This document shows positions 37,991 to 64,000 of a DNA stretch of 64,000 nt, piece after piece. Below the pieces are notes generated by a model. The model ran no database searches. It saw only the letters and a program-made list of their open reading frames with translations, and was not told the origin of the DNA. Numbering within the stretch: position 1 is the stretch's first letter; every line of letters begins with the position of its first letter. Both the position numbers and the translations under genes were made by a program. The DNA lies in the IMG/VR virus record IMGVR_UViG_3300020084_000003, positions 220,777-284,776 of that record, one strand, 5' to 3'.

Positions 37991-38064
37991 TGGCAGGGGC
38001 GGCAGGAATCAAACCCGCGCTAAATGGTTTGGAATCACTTGTGCTATCATTACACCACACCCCC
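37991..38064 (-). tRNA. tRNA-Trp(CCA)
   Basis: AGTGA-TTCCAAA-CCATT, G73, CCA; T loop TTTGATT. Confidence 0.85.
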
Positions 38065-43724: not shown

Positions 43725-43863
43725 CAGGAACAACTTTTTGCTTTAACGGCGTTCTAACTTCTAAACTAACCCCCATCAATTTTATTTTTGGTTGGGGGTG
43801 TAGGATTTGCACCTACGTTTCCGGCTCCGAATGCATAGCTGATTGTTTGCTGAAATGTTCCTT
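43725..43863 (-). ncRNA. CAGCAA-handle RNA copy A with a circularly permuted tRNA
   Basis: GGAACA-TTTCAGCAA..3' tRNA half with CCA..13 nt..5' tRNA half..TGTTCC-TG. Confidence 0.75.
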
Positions 43864-44102: not shown

Positions 44103-44501
44103 TCAAGCTTCAATCCATTCTTGAAGCCCTTCTTTGGTAAGATTTCCATGTTGGGAACCACCATACTTCTGAATCATCTTCAAAACGCGAGGAAGAATAT
44201 AGTAATAAAACTCATGTTCTCTCTCTGGTTTTCTTTTAGATTCAACTTTCTTGTAAGACTTACCTTCGATGAAGGCTCTTGCAATATAGGTTGCTCTGTT
44301 TTCATTTCTAACATCTTCTCTTCTATGAGATTTGAGATTCATGAAACTATTGTGTTTTTGGGCATACTCCGTATGGCCTTGATCCATTCCATTATCTTTT
44401 AGCCAATCTAGTTGTCTACGAAGCTTGTTCTCTTCAAAACGAATGATACGAGCTTCTTCTGAAAGATGTTTATTTTTGATTTTTAGTTCTAATGATTTCA
44501 T
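44103..44501 (-). CDS. hypothetical protein
   Basis: RBS AGGA, coherent ORF. Confidence 0.6.
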   Translation of the reverse strand: MKSLELKIKNKHLSEEARIIRFEENKLRRQLDWLKDNGMDQGHTEYAQKHNSFMNLKSHRREDVRNENRATYIARAFIEGKSYKKVESKRKPEREHEFYYYILPRVLKMIQKYGGSQHGNLTKEGLQEWIEA

Positions 44502-44650: not shown

Positions 44651-44726
44651 TGGAGCCTCGTGCGGGAATTGAACCCGCTTACATCCAGATTAGGGGCCGG
44701 GTGCATTACCATAATGCTAACGAAGC
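44651..44726 (-). tRNA. tRNA-Arg(CCT)-like, atypical anticodon arm
   Basis: Good acceptor, D and T arms and CCA; anticodon arm CCCGG-CCCCTAA-TCTGG is imperfect and lacks U33. Confidence 0.55.
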
Positions 44727-44732
44727 AATTAG

Positions 44733-44828
44733 TTCAGGAATATATTTGTGCCCACCATCGGGCGATTCGCAAAATGCTGCAAATATAGGAGTCGAACCTA
44801 TAAGTTTTGTTTGCTGTAATATTCCTTT
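44733..44828 (-). ncRNA. CAGCAA-handle RNA copy B (T-arm cargo)
   Basis: GGAATAT-TACAGCAA..ATAGG-TTCGACT-CCTAT..ATATTCC-TGAA. Confidence 0.7.
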
Positions 44829-44888
44829 ATAACAACACATCAGCGCGAACGAGGTTTGTGCTTGGCCGAAAGGAAGCCGATGTGTTGA

Positions 44889-45138
44889 TATAAAGAAACA
44901 AGTTCTTTAATTTATTCAGTAATACGCGCTTTAGACATTTGCGTTTACCATTCCGCCATTTCAGGATTTCTCCTAAAAGTGGGATTCGAACCCACAATCC
45001 GATGTTTTTGCTGTATATTGCTGTAGTATTCCTTTATAATAACATACCAGTTCTTATGTATAATGGGATTTCTCCCTTGATCTAATATATTTTTTCAGGT
45101 ATGTTATTATAAAGAAACAAGTTCTTTAATTTATTCAG
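44889..45138. repeat. 31-bp perfect direct repeat (44889-44919 and 45108-45138)
   Basis: tataaagaaacaagttctttaatttattcag occurs twice, 219 bp apart. Confidence 0.9.
44915..45035 (-). ncRNA. CAGCAA-handle RNA copy C (permuted T-acceptor-D cargo)
   Basis: T arm GTGGG-TTCGAAT-CCCAC, acceptor TTTTAGGA-GAAA-TCCTGAAA, D arm GCG-GAATGGTAAA-CGC. Confidence 0.75.
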
Positions 45139-45255
45139 GATTGATTTGCATACATGTTACCATTACACCACAAGTAGTTTTACCTACCAGCAGGGATTCG
45201 AACCCTGATCTTCCTTGTCGAAAAAGATTTGCTAAAAATTGCTGAAACAATCCTT
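45134..45255 (-). ncRNA. CAGCAA-handle RNA copy D (permuted T-acceptor-D cargo)
   Basis: CAGGG-TTCGAAT-CCCTG, CTGGTAG..CTACTTG, GTG-TAATGGTAA-CAT; handle GGATTG/CAATCC. Confidence 0.75.
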
Positions 45256-45313
45256 GTAAGATAACCATGCCACAGAAAGGATAAAAGACTTGGTTATCTC
45301 AGAAAAATTGTTA

Positions 45314-45389
<76 letters not shown>

Positions 45390-45400
45390 ATTATTTTATA

Positions 45401-45462
45401 TTCAGGGTTACATGCTTGATTCTGAGTTAGAGAATTTTTGCTTGTTTGCTGGAATAACCCTT
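45401..45462 (-). ncRNA. CAGCAA-handle RNA copy E (anticodon-arm-like hairpin)
   Basis: GGGTTA-TTCCAGCAA..ATTCT-CTAACTC-AGAAT..TAACCC-TGAA. Confidence 0.7.
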
Positions 45463-45561
45463 ATAAGGTAAGACGATAGGTTCAATATGAGGAACCAAAT
45501 ATCTCACGCACTCCCGCAGGATTACTATCTTGACATTATCATCTTACCTTAAAAAAGTTAT

Positions 45562-45638: not shown

Positions 45639-45749
45639 ATTCTTTCTTTCTATCCGTCTATCTTAACACAGCCTTGCAGCAGTGTCAAGAAGTTTTTTAC
45701 AATGCCTAACCCTTATAGGTGATTCTCTAGCGACTGTCAAGAAAGATTT

Positions 45750-45835
45750 TGGCGGTTCAGGCAGGACTTGAACCTGCACCCTTTTCGGACACCGGGCTTT
45801 TTACCCGGCGATGGCTACCATTTCATCACCGAACC
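45750..45835 (-). tRNA. class II tRNA-like gene with a non-canonical loop (UAAAAAG)
   Basis: Leu-like D arm, variable arm, T arm, G73-CCA; CCGGG-TAAAAAG-CCCGG. Confidence 0.55.
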
Positions 45836-48576: not shown

Positions 48577-49080
48577 TTATTCATTATAGCTAAATTTTCT
48601 AGCTGCTTTAGAAATGTTAGTATGATGGACATTGAACATTTCTCCTAATTCTCTTGAAGAATATTTTCCACCATTTTTCTTTGCATTTTTAATTATAAAC
48701 TCAACTTGTTCTTCTGTTAGCTTAGAACCAGAATTTTTTATTCGTTTTTTAGCTTTATTTAACCCCATCTTAAAAGCGTGTTGAACATTTTCTTTCCCTG
48801 TAACCCATTCTAGATTAGAAACAATATTATTATTCTTATTCCCATCTTTATGATTTACCTCTGGTAAGTCATTTAAATTATCAATGAACGCCATTGCAAC
48901 TAAACGATGTATTCTAAAACATTTACATACTCCCTCTACTCTAGTAGATAATACAGAATATCCAGACTTAACCTTACCTTGTTTTAAAATCTTATTCGTT
49001 CTTTTAGAAAATACTCGCCCCATATTGGAAATTATGAATATGGTTTCATAACCAACAACATCTTTCCAAATTTCTTTCAT
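48577..49080 (-). CDS. NUMOD4-HNH homing endonuclease
   Basis: EIWKDVVGYE..ISNMGRV; IHRLVAMAF..EVNHKDGNKNNN..NLEW. Confidence 0.9.
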   Translation of the reverse strand: MKEIWKDVVGYETIFIISNMGRVFSKRTNKILKQGKVKSGYSVLSTRVEGVCKCFRIHRLVAMAFIDNLNDLPEVNHKDGNKNNNIVSNLEWVTGKENVQHAFKMGLNKAKKRIKNSGSKLTEEQVEFIIKNAKKNGGKYSSRELGEMFNVHHTNISKAARKFSYNE

Positions 49081-49098: not shown

Positions 49099-49188
49099 TT
49101 CAGGATGTTATAATTTACGGAATCGAACCGTTTCGTTTTGATTTGAAGTCAAAATTTTATCCAAAGATAAATTGCTGCAAACATCCTA
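49099..49188 (-). ncRNA. CAGCAA-handle RNA copy F (D-like hairpin + UCA anticodon arm + T arm)
   Basis: GGATGTT-TGCAGCAA..TTTGA-CTTCAAA-TCAAA..ACGG-TTCGATT-CCGT..AACATCC-TGAA. Confidence 0.75.
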
Positions 49189-51757: not shown

Positions 51758-51818
51758 TACAGGGTTATCTTGATTTTCAAATCCAAATTGAAATTGTTTA
51801 GTTGCGGAACTAACCCTT
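51758..51818 (-). ncRNA. CAGCAA-handle RNA copy G (CCGCAA variant)
   Basis: GGGTTA-GTTCCGCAA..TTGGA-TTTGAAA-ATCAA..TAACCC-TG. Confidence 0.65.
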
Positions 51819-55141: not shown

Positions 55142-55228
55142 TTCTGGGTTACACCACATCATGCGGTTTAACGCCACTTTACCCCATTCCCTGATAATCG
55201 TTATATATTAGTTGCTGAACTAACCCTC
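55142..55228 (-). ncRNA. CAGCAA-handle RNA copy H
   Basis: GGGTTA-GTTCAGCAA..TGTGGTG-TAACCC-AGAA. Confidence 0.65.
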
Positions 55229-55340: not shown

Positions 55341-55432
55341 ATCTGGGTTACACCACAGAATTTACAATTCAAAGCTCCCTCACTATCGCTGGAAGTATCT
55401 TTCGATACGGCTTGGTTGCTGAATTAACCCTA
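55341..55432 (-). ncRNA. CAGCAA-handle RNA copy I
   Basis: GGGTTA-ATTCAGCAA..GTATC-GAAA-GATAC..GAA-TTGTAAA-TTC-TGTGGTG-TAACCC-AG. Confidence 0.65.
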
Positions 55433-57563: not shown

Positions 57564-57629
57564 TTCAGGGTTAACTTTTTGCTAGTTTTTCCAAATAAAA
57601 ATGCATGATTTTTTGCTGAAATAACCCTT
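57564..57629 (-). ncRNA. CAGCAA-handle RNA copy J
   Basis: GGGTTA-TTTCAGCAA..ATGCAT..AGCAAAAAGT-TAACCC-TGAA. Confidence 0.7.
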
Positions 57630-60384: not shown

Positions 60385-60465
60385 TGGCACTCCCGACAGG
60401 ATTCGAACCTGCATCTGCCATCCAGTTACGCTATATAGTTTAGAAGACTACCACGATACGGGAGC
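60385..60465 (-). tRNA. D-armless tRNA-Arg(TCT)-like RNA
   Basis: GCTCCCG/CGGGAGT-G-CCA; anticodon arm GTAGT-CTTCTAA-ACTAT only 7 nt after the acceptor; D-loop-like AACTGGAT in the variable region. Confidence 0.65.
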
Positions 60466-61087: not shown

Positions 61088-61205
61088 CTCGGGCGGCAGG
61101 GTTCGAACCTGCGACCACCTGATTACTTTTGAAGCTTCCCGAATCGAACGGGTATTTACCTTTAGCTTCCACAGTCAGGCGCTCTACCAACTGAGCTACA
61201 CCCGA
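61088..61205 (-). tRNA. tRNA-Asn(GTT) interrupted by a 45-nt insert in the anticodon
   Basis: CCTGA-CTGT|45 nt|TAA-TCAGG; 118 nt = 73 + 45; G73; CCA not encoded. Confidence 0.8.
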
Positions 61206-61974: not shown

Positions 61975-64000
61975 TCAGGTTGTTTTTGTTACCCAATTTC
62001 TGATATTGGTTCTTTCTGCGTTGGTTGGAACTCTCTTCATTACAACCAACCCCCTTACATTTAGTTCCATGTTAGGTGCAACTCCGCTGAACATTACAGC
62101 TTTAGACGGTTTTCTAATTCTGAAATGTTGTGCCGGAATGGTTCTTTGGTTTACAACTTCACCATTGATTGCATGATATATAACATCATTTCTAATCCAA
62201 CTTTCTACTGTAACCCATACACGATTGTTAGTTGTGCCACCAGTTACATCCAAGCGATCCAACCAGTTACTTGTTGGGTTGTAGCTAATCAAAGGAGAAC
62301 TTACATGACCATTTACACCACACAATACCAAGTTGTCCCAAGAGTTGTTTCCATAGTTTAGACCAAATACAGTTGGAATAGAATTTTCTGTTCCATTTCT
62401 TATTAGCTGGACTTGATATGCAACATAGATATCGCTCTCATCTGTATAGTTGAAAGATGGTGGATTTTGATCCATTGCAGATGTTGCTCTCAAATATCCA
62501 TTTACAACTGTAGGATTATTACCTGTTTTTGTTGGACCTTGATAACCAGTGGAATCCCAACGAATGAAAGTGTCATTTGGCAAAGTTGTATCTGTTCCGC
62601 CAGATGGTGGTGTTTCAGGTGTTGGGGTCGGTGTAGGAGTTGGTGTTGGTGGTGGAGTTACAGGGTTAGAATTTCCGCTAGGTCTAACACCGTCTGTATG
62701 TCTACCATTATTCCAAGCTGAAACTGTATTCAGTGTTGGGAACCAATCACCATCTTCCGGTTTCCAGTAAACTTCATTACCTTGTGAACCGCCCATACCT
62801 GCTGGACCATATTCATTCATAATTTCCCATGAAATTCTACGGAAATAATCGGCTTGTGCCTCAGTTACGTAGTCAGGGCGATGCGGTCTACTAAGTGTTC
62901 TTTGATCTACCTGATATAGCATTGTTGTTATGAATATGGTTGTTCCGAAACATATAACATCATTTGGATGTATTTTGTCCGAACCTGTTCCATCGCCAAA
63001 TAGTGTAGTCAAAGGCATTCTAAATGGTGATGTTCCATTTATAGTATCTTGCCATACACGAAGCATGAAACGATGACCCGGTGCTATCCATACGCGCCAA
63101 TCATCCGGCAAATCTGGGAACAATTGATGCATTTTCCAAGTAATGTAGTCTGCTCTATATTTAAATCTACGCTCATAATCCATAAGCAATGGAAGTGGAT
63201 TGTTATTATTCATATCCAAAGCAGGCCATATACTCCATAGAATGTATTCAGTAGGTCTAAGGTCTTTTTTGCCATCTCTCCATGCTGCTATGGCGAATTT
63301 CATTTCGTAGAACAAGTCTTCAAAAAATACGTCATGATCCGGTGGAGCAACGCCAACATCATTTAGTCCACGCTCAGTAATAACAAGACCATCATATTGA
63401 TTCATATTATCACGTGCGTTCACATCTGCACTGTTATAGTGAAGCCAACGCCACATTGTAGCTGAACCGGGCATTGTTGACTTATAATGCGTAGCCTGTG
63501 GTTCAAATGCAGCACGTGTTCCTCCAACAGCATTAGGATGTATGCTTGTAGTCACACGCATCATACCGCCCGGCCATTCACCGCCACGATGGAAATAACT
63601 ATCCATCAAACTATGGCCTGAGTGAATATAACGCTGTCTGTCGGAAGATGCAACCCTTAACTGTCCAGTTGACGGATTTGTAGGTGGAGTTTCTGGCTCT
63701 TCTGGTTGTTCAGGTTCTTCCGGTAGTTCTGGCTCTTCTGGCAACTCTGGTTCTTCTGGTTCTTCGACTTCTTCAACCTCTGATACCACAATCGGTCCTG
63801 CAAGGCAAGAGAAAACTCTGTATGCAACTCCATTTTGTAGTCCGCTAAGGGTTGAACCGGGTTCCATATTAGTGTAGAAGGAAGCTCCATTCAAGCTATT
63901 TCCACTATTCATACTTGGGACGGCCAAGTATGAAAGTGTTTCGGATTGTGTAAAATCAACAATTACTGGTCTAGCATTTGCTGATGGTGTTATAGTTGGA
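61975..64000 (-). CDS. SGNH-like/lectin-like fibre protein, paralogue of part of ORF 15837 (5' end lies outside the window)
   Basis: Frame stays open to 64000; YIHSGHSLMDSY..PGSA.MWRW..DKIH and WDSTGYQGPTKTG match the 2220-aa protein. Confidence 0.75.
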   Translation of the reverse strand, partial: PTITPSANARPVIVDFTQSETLSYLAVPSMNSGNSLNGASFYTNMEPGSTLSGLQNGVAYRVFSCLAGPIVVSEVEEVEEPEEPELPEEPELPEEPEQPEEPETPPTNPSTGQLRVASSDRQRYIHSGHSLMDSYFHRGGEWPGGMMRVTTSIHPNAVGGTRAAFEPQATHYKSTMPGSATMWRWLHYNSADVNARDNMNQYDGLVITERGLNDVGVAPPDHDVFFEDLFYEMKFAIAAWRDGKKDLRPTEYILWSIWPALDMNNNNPLPLLMDYERRFKYRADYITWKMHQLFPDLPDDWRVWIAPGHRFMLRVWQDTINGTSPFRMPLTTLFGDGTGSDKIHPNDVICFGTTIFITTMLYQVDQRTLSRPHRPDYVTEAQADYFRRISWEIMNEYGPAGMGGSQGNEVYWKPEDGDWFPTLNTVSAWNNGRHTDGVRPSGNSNPVTPPPTPTPTPTPTPETPPSGGTDTTLPNDTFIRWDSTGYQGPTKTGNNPTVVNGYLRATSAMDQNPPSFNYTDESDIYVAYQVQLIRNGTENSIPTVFGLNYGNNSWDNLVLCGVNGHVSSPLISYNPTSNWLDRLDVTGGTTNNRVWVTVESWIRNDVIYHAINGEVVNQRTIPAQHFRIRKPSKAVMFSGVAPNMELNVRGLVVMKRVPTNAERTNIRNWVTKTT

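What the first reader, a model, noticed from the sequence alone, without database searches (positions are those of the whole stretch)
44733..45255. Cassette-like array: fixed repeats alternate with variable structured inserts
Handle copies D, C and B are separated by an identical 31-bp repeat (44889-44919, 45108-45138). On the minus strand each repeat leads into a long closed stem with unrelated interiors (14-bp TATAATAACATACC/GGTATGTTATTATA; TATATCAACACATCGGC/GCTGATGTGTTGTTATA). Copies C and D carry different permuted tRNA bodies whose acceptor is capped by a short loop (GAAA in C). Scaffold conserved with cargo replaced looks like an array that captures or swaps tRNA pieces. Stem-closed elements also sit just 5' of copies D, E, G, H, I and J.
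Basis: partly seen in the sequence, partly recalled or inferred. Interest (0 to 1): 0.75.

Follow-up and report, generated by a model that had tools for sequence, protein, structure and literature searches.

The report
Phage Y-RNA-like tRNA mimics in tandem
The three repeated units are most likely tandem genes for small structured RNAs that mimic tRNA and resemble bacterial Y RNAs, members of a large unannotated phage RNA family that travels with a divergent Ro60-like protein.

Summary
It includes an exact 31-bp repeat, long closed stems, and three units (B, C, D) on the minus strand whose interiors are circularly permuted tRNA-like bodies.

The "handle" is the 5' half of a conserved RNA module that I call S. 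S has a 7-9 bp closing stem (P1) that covaries between copies. A UU(A)CAGCAA motif follows the 5' strand, then a variable interior, then an A-rich 3' strand, and the module ends in CCUGU.

The window holds ten S copies, all on the tRNA strand. At least 120 IMG/VR contigs carry S between tRNA genes.

S interiors range from a small hairpin to tRNA-like domains ordered T-arm, acceptor 3' strand, cap or CCA spacer, acceptor 5' strand, D-arm. This is the connectivity of YrlA-type bacterial Y RNAs.

The commonest neighbour of S is a DUF2828+DUF7788 protein of about 475 aa. Its predicted fold matches Ro60 (TROVE+vWA) over its full length.
- It is present in 17 of 20 large S-bearing contigs and in 1 of 18 random ones, and that one also has S beside the gene.
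- S ends within 150 nt upstream of the gene in 18 of 22 loci.
- This phage encodes one copy, elsewhere in the genome.

Best reading: these are Y-RNA-like partners of a phage Ro-like protein. They are not a DNA cassette-capture array. Expression and binding are untested.

The parts
45137..45254 (-). Unit B: S module with a permuted tRNA-like body. P1a AGGATTG 45254-45248; TTTCAGCAA motif; variable stem-loop; T-arm 45207-45191; acceptor 3' strand CTGGTAG; cap GTAAAA; acceptor 5' strand CTACTTG; TG; D-arm GTGTAATGGTAACAT; P1b CAATCCT 45143-45137.
   Evidence: CM R1 gives 15.3 bits, E=0.12. Same architecture and D-arm as L115:2345-2459, which lies upstream of a Ro-like gene.
45108..45138 (-). 31-bp repeat, copy 1. 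It covers the last 2 nt of P1b of B, the GAATAAATT tail, a small hairpin AAAGAAC-TTG-TTTCTTT, and the first bases of the next long stem.
   Evidence: Exact identity with 44889-44919. Logan contigs break here, as expected for k=31.
45035..45111 (-). Long hairpin between B and C. It has a 14-bp perfect stem, and its loop contains a GGGA-GAAA-TCCC hairpin.
   Evidence: MFE -19.5 kcal/mol, z -4.6.
44918..45033 (-). Unit C: S module with a permuted tRNA-like body. P1a AGGAATAC; TACAGCAA motif; T-arm 44995-44979; acceptor 3' strand TTTTAGG; cap AGAAAT (GAAA loop); acceptor 5' strand CCTGAAA; TG; D-arm GCGGAATGGTAAACGC; P1b GTATTACT 44925-44918.
   Evidence: CM R1 gives only 12.1 bits, E=0.9, because of the large insert.
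44889..44919 (-). 31-bp repeat, copy 2.
44828..44892 (-). Long hairpin between C and D. It is homologous to 45035-45111, with compensatory changes in the stem.
   Evidence: z -4.3.
44736..44826 (-). Unit D: S module with a permuted tRNA-like body. P1a AGGAATAT; TACAGCAA motif; T-arm 44801-44785; acceptor 3' strand ATTTGCA; cap GCATTT; acceptor 5' strand TGCGAAT; D-arm CCCGATGGTGGG; P1b ATATTCCT 44743-44736.
   Evidence: CM R1 gives 22.9 bits, E=1e-3, full length. z -2.8.
45404..45461 (-). Minimal S module (P1 AGGGTTA/TAACCCT), 14 nt upstream of tRNA-Thr.
   Evidence: CM R1 gives 40.4 bits, but this copy was in the training set.
43726..43862 (-). Unit E: S module with a permuted tRNA-like body that keeps an encoded ACCA end (ACCCCCA-ACCA), a 13-nt spacer, and acceptor 5' strand TGGGGGT.
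   Evidence: Orthologous to L089:11624-11760.
49102..49187 (-). S module whose interior holds D-like, anticodon-like (loop CUUCAAA) and T hairpins in normal order, without an acceptor stem.
   Evidence: CM R1 gives 26.5 bits, E=1e-4, not in training.
51761..51817 (-). Minimal S module upstream of an ORF.
55344..55431 (-). S module with another kind of interior.
   Evidence: CM R1 gives 21.1 bits, E=3e-3.
55145..55227 (-). S module with another kind of interior.
   Evidence: CM R1 gives 22.3 bits, E=1.4e-3.
57567..57628 (-). Minimal S module, 10 nt upstream of a tRNA.
45314..45389 (-). tRNA-Thr(UGU), flanking the array on its 5' side and on the same strand.
44651..44726 (-). tRNA called Arg(CCU), starting 10 nt after unit D. 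It aligns with the tRNA(CUA) genes of relatives.

Best explanation
B, C and D are three tandem genes for small non-coding RNAs of one family, which I call S. They are transcribed with the tRNA operon on the minus strand.

Each RNA is closed by a short stem formed by its 5' and 3' ends (P1). A single-stranded UU(A)CAGCAA motif follows the 5' strand, and the RNA ends in CCUG(U). The interior is a variable module. In B, C and D it is a tRNA-shaped domain wired in permuted order: variable arm, T-arm, capped acceptor stem, D-arm. P1 leaves from where the anticodon stem would be. This is the architecture of YrlA-type bacterial Y RNAs.

Inferred mechanism:
- Flanking tRNA-processing cuts release the RNAs. 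In this phage the long hairpins between units may also help.
- P1 plus the CAGCAA strand is the docking site for the phage's Ro60-like protein (DUF2828+DUF7788, G000:C1 about 17.2-18.7 kb).
- The tRNA-like module recruits or gates a tRNA-recognising or RNA-degrading partner, as Y RNAs do for Ro60 and PNPase.

Shown here: the sequence anatomy, covariation, family distribution, the link to the gene, and the Ro60 fold of the protein. Inferred: transcription, processing, protein binding and the downstream effector.
For: 1. P1 pairing. All 10 handle copies found by the 5' motif alone have the reverse complement of their first 7 nt 50-130 nt downstream: 8 exact and 2 with 1 mismatch. The same holds for 7 of 7 copies in relative L085. 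P1 sequences differ between copies with two-sided changes.

2. The permuted tRNA-like domain is real. Acceptor strands pair 6.7 of 7 within units against 3.7 of 7 between units, and 0 of 20000 permutations reach this. T-loop and D-loop GG are conserved. The Rfam YrlA model matches such a body next to a Ro-like gene at 46 bits, E=1.5e-7 (L222:446-511), and another at 30.8 bits.

3. The family is large and tRNA-linked. At least 120 IMG/VR contigs match the strict pattern, always between a tRNA CCA end and the next tRNA. 19 metagenome relatives carry many copies. In the own genome, CM hits occur only in the tRNA region.

4. Protein partner. The commonest neighbouring ORF is DUF2828+DUF7788 (32 of 120 loci). 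Its model matches Ro60/TROVE structures full length: the top 13 PDB hits, including phage phiLo Ro60, Rsr and Xenopus and human Ro60. Swiss-Prot models give the same result.

5. Co-occurrence. The gene is in 17 of 20 large S-bearing contigs, in the own genome and in the nearest relative, against 1 of 18 random large viral contigs. That single contig has a 44.8-bit S hit about 0.4 kb from the gene.

6. Adjacency. An S hit ends within 150 nt upstream on the same strand in 18 of 22 non-redundant loci, often as tandem arrays that include capped permuted tRNA-like units like B. This is the layout described for YrlA/YrlB upstream of rsr (PMC4201824) and for Yrl1/Yrl2 upstream of phage phiLo Ro60 (PMC12135203).
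Against: - No expression, RNA-end or binding data exist. No public RNA run holds the locus, and the protein-RNA complex prediction was not run by the tool.
- In this phage the Ro-like gene is not next to the array. It lies about 247 kb away on the linear record, and no S sits upstream of it.
- B and C score poorly with the minimal-S covariance model (E 0.12 and 0.9). Their folding energies are not unusual (z -1.4 and -1.1).
- Rfam YrlA and Y_RNA models do not hit B-D even at E<=10.
- Pfam TROVE does not hit the genome.
- The conserved motif (CAGCAA) differs from the GNCGAA or CGAA motif of known bacterial and phage Y RNAs.
- Many S copies sit between tRNAs far from any Ro-like gene, so a purely cis role in the tRNA operon is not excluded.
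Confidence: 0.6

Rival explanations
1. S modules are only cis-acting spacer or processing elements of polycistronic tRNA precursors. They would guide RNase E, RNase P or RNase III cuts, or insulate folding of neighbouring tRNAs. The tRNA-like interiors would be tolerated relics with no trans function.
For: Minimal S always lies 4-7 nt after a tRNA CCA end and 8-14 nt before the next tRNA. AU-rich single-stranded flanks are plausible RNase E sites (my inference). Long hairpins separate the units in this phage.
Against: Most adjacent tRNAs in these arrays have plain 5-10 nt spacers without S. S also precedes protein genes, and specifically the Ro-like gene, in tandem arrays without intervening tRNAs. 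Strong co-occurrence with the Ro-like gene has no explanation under this reading. The invariant CAGCAA motif and the maintained acceptor, T and D elements point to selection on more than a cut site.
Confidence: 0.15
2. The units are true circularly permuted tRNA genes. They would mature into working, aminoacylatable tRNAs or two-piece tRNAs through cuts at the acceptor spacer, with or without end-joining by the phage RNA ligases.
For: Several family members keep discriminator+CCA after the acceptor 3' strand, followed by a spacer and the 5' strand: unit E, L085:8787, L085:11809, L089:8351, L089:11624 and the long-hairpin type. The phage encodes two RNA-ligase-family proteins and a CCA-adding enzyme. 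M. smegmatis YrlA is cut by RNase P and CCA-added (PMC4201824).
Against: B, C and D have no CCA, and their acceptor stems are closed by 6-nt caps. No standard 7-nt anticodon loop can be rebuilt from the strands next to P1. Where anticodon-like loops exist, they vary among orthologues (UCA, UUA, UAU, and a 6-nt loop). No RtcB was found. No archaeal-type splicing endonuclease was searched for.
Confidence: 0.07
3. The tRNA-like RNAs act as decoys or sponges for host tRNA-targeting defence nucleases or tRNA-modifying toxins, independently of the Ro-like protein.
For: The tRNA elbow and acceptor mimicry is maintained. The phage carries a full tRNA set and RNA-repair enzymes, which suggests a conflict over tRNA.
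Against: There is no direct evidence. Anticodon nucleases need an anticodon loop, which B-D lack. This reading does not explain the conserved P1/CAGCAA scaffold of minimal S, or the link to the Ro-like gene.
Confidence: 0.08
4. One reading: a DNA-level cassette array, integron-like, in which fixed repeats are recombination sites that capture or exchange tRNA fragments.
For: The interiors differ between copies and between relatives at the same position. The exact 31-bp repeat lies beside diverged sequence.
Against: The closing arms covary, so they pair; they are not bound as a fixed site. The arm order (GGGTTA...TAACCC) is the reverse of attC R''/R' (my knowledge of attC). The cargo is not derived from the phages' own tRNAs. 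Every copy has one orientation, that of the tRNA genes. No cassette-deletion or cassette-insertion joints appeared in four metagenomes, although k=31 contigs could not show a deletion between the repeats. No search for an integrase was made.
Confidence: 0.03
5. The units are decaying debris of tandem tRNA gene duplications: the 3' half of one pseudogene followed by the 5' half of the next, with no function.
For: Chen et al. warn that dimeric tRNAs can mimic YrlA in searches (PMC4201824). A weak tRNA-model match spans the C 5' half plus the D 3' half (14.8 bits).
Against: The acceptor 3' and 5' strands within a unit are complementary, and those across units are not. P1 encloses each unit. The same architecture recurs with different sequences in many phages.
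Confidence: 0.05

Closest known systems
YrlA-type bacterial and phage Y RNAs (Rfam RF02553) with Ro60/Rsr; Yrl1/Yrl2 of Thermus phage phiLo
   Same: - The 5' and 3' ends form a stem.
- A conserved single-stranded motif follows the 5' strand.
- The interior is a tRNA-like domain ordered V, T, acceptor stem-loop, D.
- Several different copies lie in tandem immediately upstream of a Ro60-fold (TROVE+vWA) gene on the same strand (PMC4201824, PMC12135203).
- The YrlA model partly matches a relative's cargo at 46 bits.
   Different: - The motif is UU(A)CAGCAA, not GNCGAA or CGAA.
- The Rfam YrlA model does not reach threshold on any copy and does not hit B-D at all.
- The partner protein belongs to DUF2828/DUF7788 and is missed by Pfam TROVE.
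- Most copies are embedded in tRNA arrays.
- The interior is modular: a hairpin, permuted or normal-order tRNA-like domains, or other folds.
Dictyostelid Class I RNAs (Rfam RF01414)
   Same: - Length is about 50-65 nt.
- A 6-7 bp terminal stem has conserved pairing but not conserved sequence.
- A conserved motif lies directly 3' of the 5' stem strand (CCUUACAGCAA against GUU-CAGCAA or UUACAGCAA).
- The 3' part is A-rich.
- The termini are AG...CUGU.
- The rest is variable (PMC7919456; alignment).
   Different: - Rfam scores are 24-28 bits against a gathering score of 41.5, and only on some copies. There were none in four other loci and none in the window.
- The host is a phage, not an amoeba.
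- There is no DUSE promoter.
- The only Class I RNA partner named in the text I read is the RRM protein Rnp1A (three others are unnamed there).
- Class I RNAs were reported as unique to Dictyostelia.
Circularly permuted tRNA genes (red and green algae, some archaea) and two-piece tmRNA
   Same: The gene order is 3' half (T-arm, acceptor 3' strand, sometimes CCA), then spacer, then 5' half (acceptor 5' strand, D-arm). The ends are held by a helix.
   Different: - There is no bulge-helix-bulge motif.
- No anticodon loop can be reconstituted.
- B-D lack CCA.
- ARAGORN finds no permuted tmRNA.
- The tag-like reading frame from GCA is not closed consistently by a stop (my reading).

Membership tests
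YrlA / bacterial Y RNA (RF02553) | Reaches the Rfam gathering score of the YrlA covariance model (69 bits). | tested here: not met
   There is no YrlA match on 44727-45313 at E<=10. Relatives' cargo reaches 46 and 30.8 bits, below the cut-off.
YrlA / bacterial Y RNA (RF02553) | tRNA-like domain with T-arm, closed acceptor stem-loop and D-arm in that order, enclosed by a terminal stem. | tested here: met
   for B, C and D.
YrlA / bacterial Y RNA (RF02553) | GNCGAA(N0-1)G or CGAA motif near the 5' end. | tested here: not met
   The motif at that position is UU(A)CAGCAA in all copies.
YrlA / bacterial Y RNA (RF02553) | Encoded within a few kb of a Ro60 orthologue, on the same strand. | tested here: inconclusive
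   This is met for the family: 18 of 22 loci have S within 150 nt upstream of a Ro60-fold gene. It is not met for this window, where the gene lies about 247 kb away on the record. Pfam TROVE itself is absent.
YrlA / bacterial Y RNA (RF02553) | Bound by Ro60 in vivo or in vitro. | not testable with these tools
Dictyostelid Class I RNA (RF01414) | Reaches the Rfam gathering score (41.5 bits). | tested here: not met
   Some minimal S copies score 24.2-27.7 bits. There are none in the window.
Dictyostelid Class I RNA (RF01414) | Short covarying terminal stem, conserved motif next to the 5' stem strand, termini AG...CUGU, length about 60 nt. | tested here: met
   Minimal S copies meet this. B-D are longer because of their cargo.
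Dictyostelid Class I RNA (RF01414) | DUSE promoter about 60 nt upstream; found in Dictyostelia. | tested here: not met
   The loci are tailed-phage contigs. S starts 4-7 nt after a tRNA.
Circularly permuted tRNA gene | The 3' half lies upstream of the 5' half, with complementary acceptor strands. | tested here: met
Circularly permuted tRNA gene | The termini form a processing motif that, once joined, restores a normal anticodon loop. | tested here: not met
   No 7-nt loop with U33 can be rebuilt from the strands next to P1 in B-D or in relatives (my reading).
Integron-like cassette array | attC-type sites (RYYYAAC...GTTRRRY) and an integrase. | tested here: not met
   The arms read AGGNNNN...NNNNCCT and covary between copies. 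No integrase search was made.
Ro60 / TROVE+vWA protein (the proposed partner) | Ring of HEAT-like helices followed by a vWA domain, matching solved Ro60 structures over the full length. | tested here: met
   The model has pLDDT 74. The top 13 PDB hits are all Ro60/TROVE, with E from 1e-8 to 7e-5 and TM 0.41-0.58. Swiss-Prot Ro60 models are top hits. Pfam TROVE is not matched by sequence.

The most novel reading that the evidence does not exclude
The phage S scaffold and the dictyostelid Class I RNAs may be the same RNA family. Both have a terminal stem, a UUACAGCAA motif and a CUGU end. Both could be ligands of DUF2828/DUF7788-type Ro60 paralogues. This protein family also occurs in eukaryotes; most fold-cluster hits carry only the DUF7788 name, and one is named Plant/T31B5-30 protein. 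Class I RNAs would then be Y-type RNAs and would not be unique to social amoebae. DUF2828 proteins would be a second, widespread branch of Ro ribonucleoproteins.
Probability: 0.15. Interest if true: 0.9.

Novelty: new variant of a known kind. Interest (0 to 1): 0.72.

Why it matters
If correct, this would have four consequences.
- It defines a large family of Y-RNA-like molecules in environmental phages that Rfam 15 does not hold. At least 120 viral contigs match one strict pattern alone.
- It gives the family a candidate protein partner and assigns a Ro60-like role to the uncharacterised DUF2828/DUF7788 proteins, which also occur in eukaryotes.
- It shows that phages place tRNA mimics inside their tRNA operons, with a modular "scaffold plus cargo" design. 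This gives a natural series of variants for asking what the tRNA-like module of Y RNAs is for.
- It also explains stretches in phage tRNA arrays that tRNA finders leave blank.

Tried and rejected
- **Promoter reading of the handle or of the TGTTATAAT-like tail.** The tail lies too close to the tRNA 5' end to serve as its promoter. Real TTGACA-17-TAAGAT promoters exist elsewhere, for example at 45688-45660.
- **tmRNA-like tag frame starting at GCA of CAGCAA.** Stops in P1b close the frame in some copies but not others (45461 yes; 57628 and L095:4385 no).
- **Small self-cleaving ribozymes, group I intron.** There are no Rfam matches at E<=10. The unit between bodies is about 155 nt, and the acceptor strands do not pair across units.
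- **Intron-split tRNA (5' half of one unit plus 3' half of the next).** The acceptor strands are not complementary, and the tRNA model gives only 14.8 bits.
- **Canonical Ro.** Pfam TROVE is absent. The partner was found only through neighbourhood clustering.
- **RtcB.** Absent.
- **The exact 16-mer handle search in IMG/VR.** It returned about 84 single hits, consistent with chance (my estimate), and no clear S-bearing relatives among them on a quick filter.
- **ORF window:46481-46885.** It found no relatives.
- **RNA-seq.** Only 4-5% word matches in wastewater runs, so it is not informative.
- **Protein-RNA complex prediction.** The tool did not fold it, so it is not evidence.
- **Literature.** There are no papers on permuted tRNAs in phages. 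DUF2828 appears only in unrelated plant and tardigrade papers.
- **Dictyostelium and DUF2828.** Organism names are hidden, so I could not check whether Dictyostelium encodes DUF2828.
Full report
**Context.** The window is the last 64 kb of a 284,776-bp IMG/VR virus record. The virus is a tailed jumbo phage. It has a terminase large subunit, a sheath-like protein, tail-fibre-like proteins and homing endonucleases. ARAGORN and Rfam find about 30 tRNA genes, all on the minus strand, between 33 and 62 kb. The finding lies between tRNA-Thr (45314-45389) and a tRNA called Arg(CCU) (44651-44726).

**Checking the observation.**
- The 31-bp repeat is exact at the stated coordinates, has two copies only, and does not extend.
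- The two long stems are present, one with 14 of 14 pairs and one with 15 of 17. They fold much better than shuffles (z -4.6 and -4.3).
- These stems are not unrelated. They are homologous, with compensatory changes.
- Read on the minus strand, B, C and D each contain a T-arm, a 7-nt acceptor 3' strand, a 6-nt cap (GAAA closed by A-U in C), the complementary acceptor 5' strand, a U8-like TG or CG, and a D-arm with GG.
- Contigs of three independent lake-water DNA runs carry the same arrangement without differences.

**What the handle is.**
- A search for the handle by its 5' motif alone gives 10 copies in the whole genome. All are on the minus strand in the tRNA region.
- In every copy the first 7 nt have their reverse complement 50-130 nt downstream: 8 exact and 2 with one mismatch.
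- These arms differ between copies with matching changes: AGGGTTA/TAACCCT, AGGATTG/CAATCCT, AGGAATAT/ATATTCCT, AGGATGT/ACATCCT and AGGAACA/TGTTCCT.
- The handle is therefore the 5' half of a closed RNA module, S. The module runs P1a, UU(A)CAGCAA, variable interior, A-rich strand, P1b, then G(U/A).
- Thermodynamic folding recovers P1 plus the T, acceptor and D hairpins for B and D.

**Relatives.**
- A 132-aa ORF next to the array (44103-44501) led to a 318-kb IMG/VR contig (L085) and 19 metagenome loci.
- All carry tRNA arrays with many S modules in the tRNA orientation. Their P1 sequences are again different and complementary. In an alignment of 22 minimal modules, three of the seven P1 pairs show two-sided changes. 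The 100% pairing there is partly by selection.
The element always starts 4-7 nt after a tRNA CCA end and ends 8-14 nt before the next tRNA.
- A covariance model of minimal S (R1) finds untrained copies in the window at E of 1e-4 to 3e-3, including D. B and C, with their large inserts, score only E 0.12 and 0.9. In the whole genome only the tRNA region scores.

**Cargo.** S interiors fall into classes:
- a small hairpin (49-67 nt modules);
- permuted tRNA-like bodies with a capped acceptor (B, C, D, L085:13934, L088:1525, L115:2345 and others);
- permuted bodies that keep discriminator+CCA, a spacer or long hairpin, and then the 5' strand (unit E at 43726-43862, L085:8787, L089:8351 and others);
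- normal-order D, anticodon and T hairpins without an acceptor stem (49102-49187 and orthologues);
- other folds.

Across 13 permuted bodies the acceptor strands pair 6.7 of 7 within units and 3.7 of 7 between units, with 0 of 20000 permutations reaching this. The bodies match the phages' own tRNAs only in generic T- and D-arm stretches. They are old tRNA-like domains, not recent captures. At the position upstream of the 132-aa ORF, relatives carry S modules with different interiors, so the locus is not invariant.

**The partner.**
- I clustered ORFs from the 120 S-bearing loci. The commonest family (32 loci) is a protein of about 473 aa with DUF2828 and DUF7788.
- The own genome has one copy, and so does the nearest relative.
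- An AlphaFold model (pLDDT 74) shows helical repeats followed by an alpha/beta domain. It matches Ro60/TROVE structures over the full length: the top 13 PDB hits include phage phiLo Ro60, D. radiodurans Rsr, and Xenopus and human Ro60. Swiss-Prot Ro60 and telomerase TROVE proteins are also top hits.
- Pfam TROVE does not detect this protein.
- The gene is present in 17 of 20 large S-bearing contigs. The three without it are 22-40% complete. It is present in 1 of 18 random large viral contigs. That one contig turned out to have a 44.8-bit S hit about 0.4 kb from the gene.
- In 18 of 22 non-redundant loci an S hit ends within 150 nt upstream of the gene on the same strand. It is often the last of a tandem array that includes capped permuted tRNA-like units resembling B.
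- The Rfam YrlA model matches one such unit at 46 bits, E=1.5e-7, which is below its cut-off of 69.

**Interpretation.**
- The layout parallels what is published for Y RNAs. YrlA has a terminal stem, a short 5' motif, and a tRNA-like domain ordered V, T, acceptor stem-loop, D. It is encoded with YrlB just upstream of rsr (PMC4201824).
- Thermus phage phiLo Ro60 binds two Y-like RNAs encoded upstream of its gene and assembles with host PNPase (PMC12135203).
- Aravind's group noted TROVE proteins with a tRNA-like partner in a few jumbo phages (PMC7824862).
- I therefore read B, C and D as three tandem Y-RNA-like tRNA mimics of a new, widespread phage family. I read the 31-bp repeat and the long hairpins as the duplicated inter-unit spacer of a local tandem duplication whose parts have since diverged while keeping pairing.
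- Transcription, processing, binding and the effector are inferred, not shown. No RNA run holds the locus, and the protein-RNA complex tool did not run.
- Points against this reading: the Ro-like gene is far from the array in this phage. B and C are weak by the minimal-S model and by folding energy. The motif differs from GNCGAA. Rfam YrlA does not hit B-D.

**An unexpected resemblance.**
- Some minimal S copies give sub-threshold matches (24-28 bits, cut-off 41.5) to Rfam's Dictyostelium Class I RNA.
- The printed alignment shows the same layout: a 6-7 bp terminal stem, CCUUACAGCAA against GUU-CAGCAA next to the 5' strand, an A-rich 3' part and a CUG(U) end.
- Kjellin et al. describe these features as defining Class I RNAs and report the class as unique to Dictyostelia (PMC7919456).
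- Other S loci give no such match, so this is a lead only.
- I could not check whether dictyostelids encode DUF2828 proteins, because organism names are hidden.

**Rivals.** They are weighed in the Rival explanations section. The covariation of P1 and the acceptor stems, the single orientation, the lack of similarity to resident tRNAs, and the tight link to a Ro60-fold gene favour the Y-RNA-like reading.

**Verdict.** I classify this as a new variant of a known kind (Ro/Y-RNA ribonucleoproteins with tRNA-mimic RNAs). Confidence in the main reading is about 0.6.

Noticed in passing
window 44651-44726 (-): The tRNA called Arg(CCU) aligns with the tRNA(CUA) amber-suppressor-type genes that sit at the same place (upstream of the 132-aa ORF) in relatives. 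Its anticodon loop reads CCCUAAU, so it may be a CUA tRNA with C33. Many relatives (L085, L087, L088, L089, L092, L096, L098, L101, L102, L105) carry a tRNA(CUA).
   Followed up: partly
window 45750-45835 (-): An 86-nt tRNA-like gene called Phe(AAA) by ARAGORN has a long variable arm and an odd anticodon loop. Rfam gives only a weak tRNA-Sec match (26.5 bits).
   Followed up: no
window 61088-61205 (-); also 37994-38064 and 60388-60465: Rfam calls tRNAs here that ARAGORN misses. The first is 118 nt long, which suggests an insertion of about 45 nt inside the tRNA.
   Followed up: no
window 49102-49187 (-) and ORF 48577-49080 (-): An S module with normal-order tRNA-like hairpins and an anticodon-like loop CUUCAAA (UCA) lies directly upstream of an HNH endonuclease gene. 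Orthologues in relatives have UCA, UUA, UAU or a 6-nt loop.
   Followed up: partly
window 45470-45550, 45260-45300, 45035-45111, 44828-44892 (-): Long hairpins (9-17 bp stems with large loops) sit between a tRNA or S unit and the next S unit in this phage. They are absent at the equivalent places in relatives, where S follows the tRNA CCA directly. Possible processing sites; function unknown.
   Followed up: partly
window 45660-45688 and about 45715-45745 (-): Two sigma-70-type promoters (TTGACA-17-TAAGAT with TG; TTGACA-17-TATAAG) lie upstream of tRNA-Met. They are likely the start of the transcript that runs through tRNA-Thr and units B-D.
   Followed up: no
window 44783 (run X6): In one lake-water run a contig follows the window up to 44783 (inside unit D) and then continues with unrelated sequence. 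This points to a related strain with different content there.
   Followed up: no
window 44103-44501 (-): A 132-aa ORF with no family match is conserved (48-58% identity) next to the suppressor-type tRNA in all 20 related loci.
   Followed up: partly
window 63682-63780 (+ strand coordinates; ORF 61975-63927 on -): A 9-bp periodic repeat (TTCTGGNTC-like, 7 or more copies) lies inside a 650-aa ORF with no PHROG match.
   Followed up: no
L109 (JBBAJX010000055.1, Sediminibacterium MAG, 4978 bp): This is the only bacterial-genome contig with the strict S pattern. It is a short tRNA-array contig, so it is probably a phage fragment binned with the MAG or a hint to the host.
   Followed up: no
G000:C1 about 13.4-18.7 kb (outside the window; L108, L230-L232): The CCA-adding enzyme gene (PolyA_pol family) and the Ro60-like DUF2828/DUF7788 gene lie about 3 kb apart. 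Two RNA-ligase-family genes lie at about 35 kb and 193 kb.
   Followed up: partly
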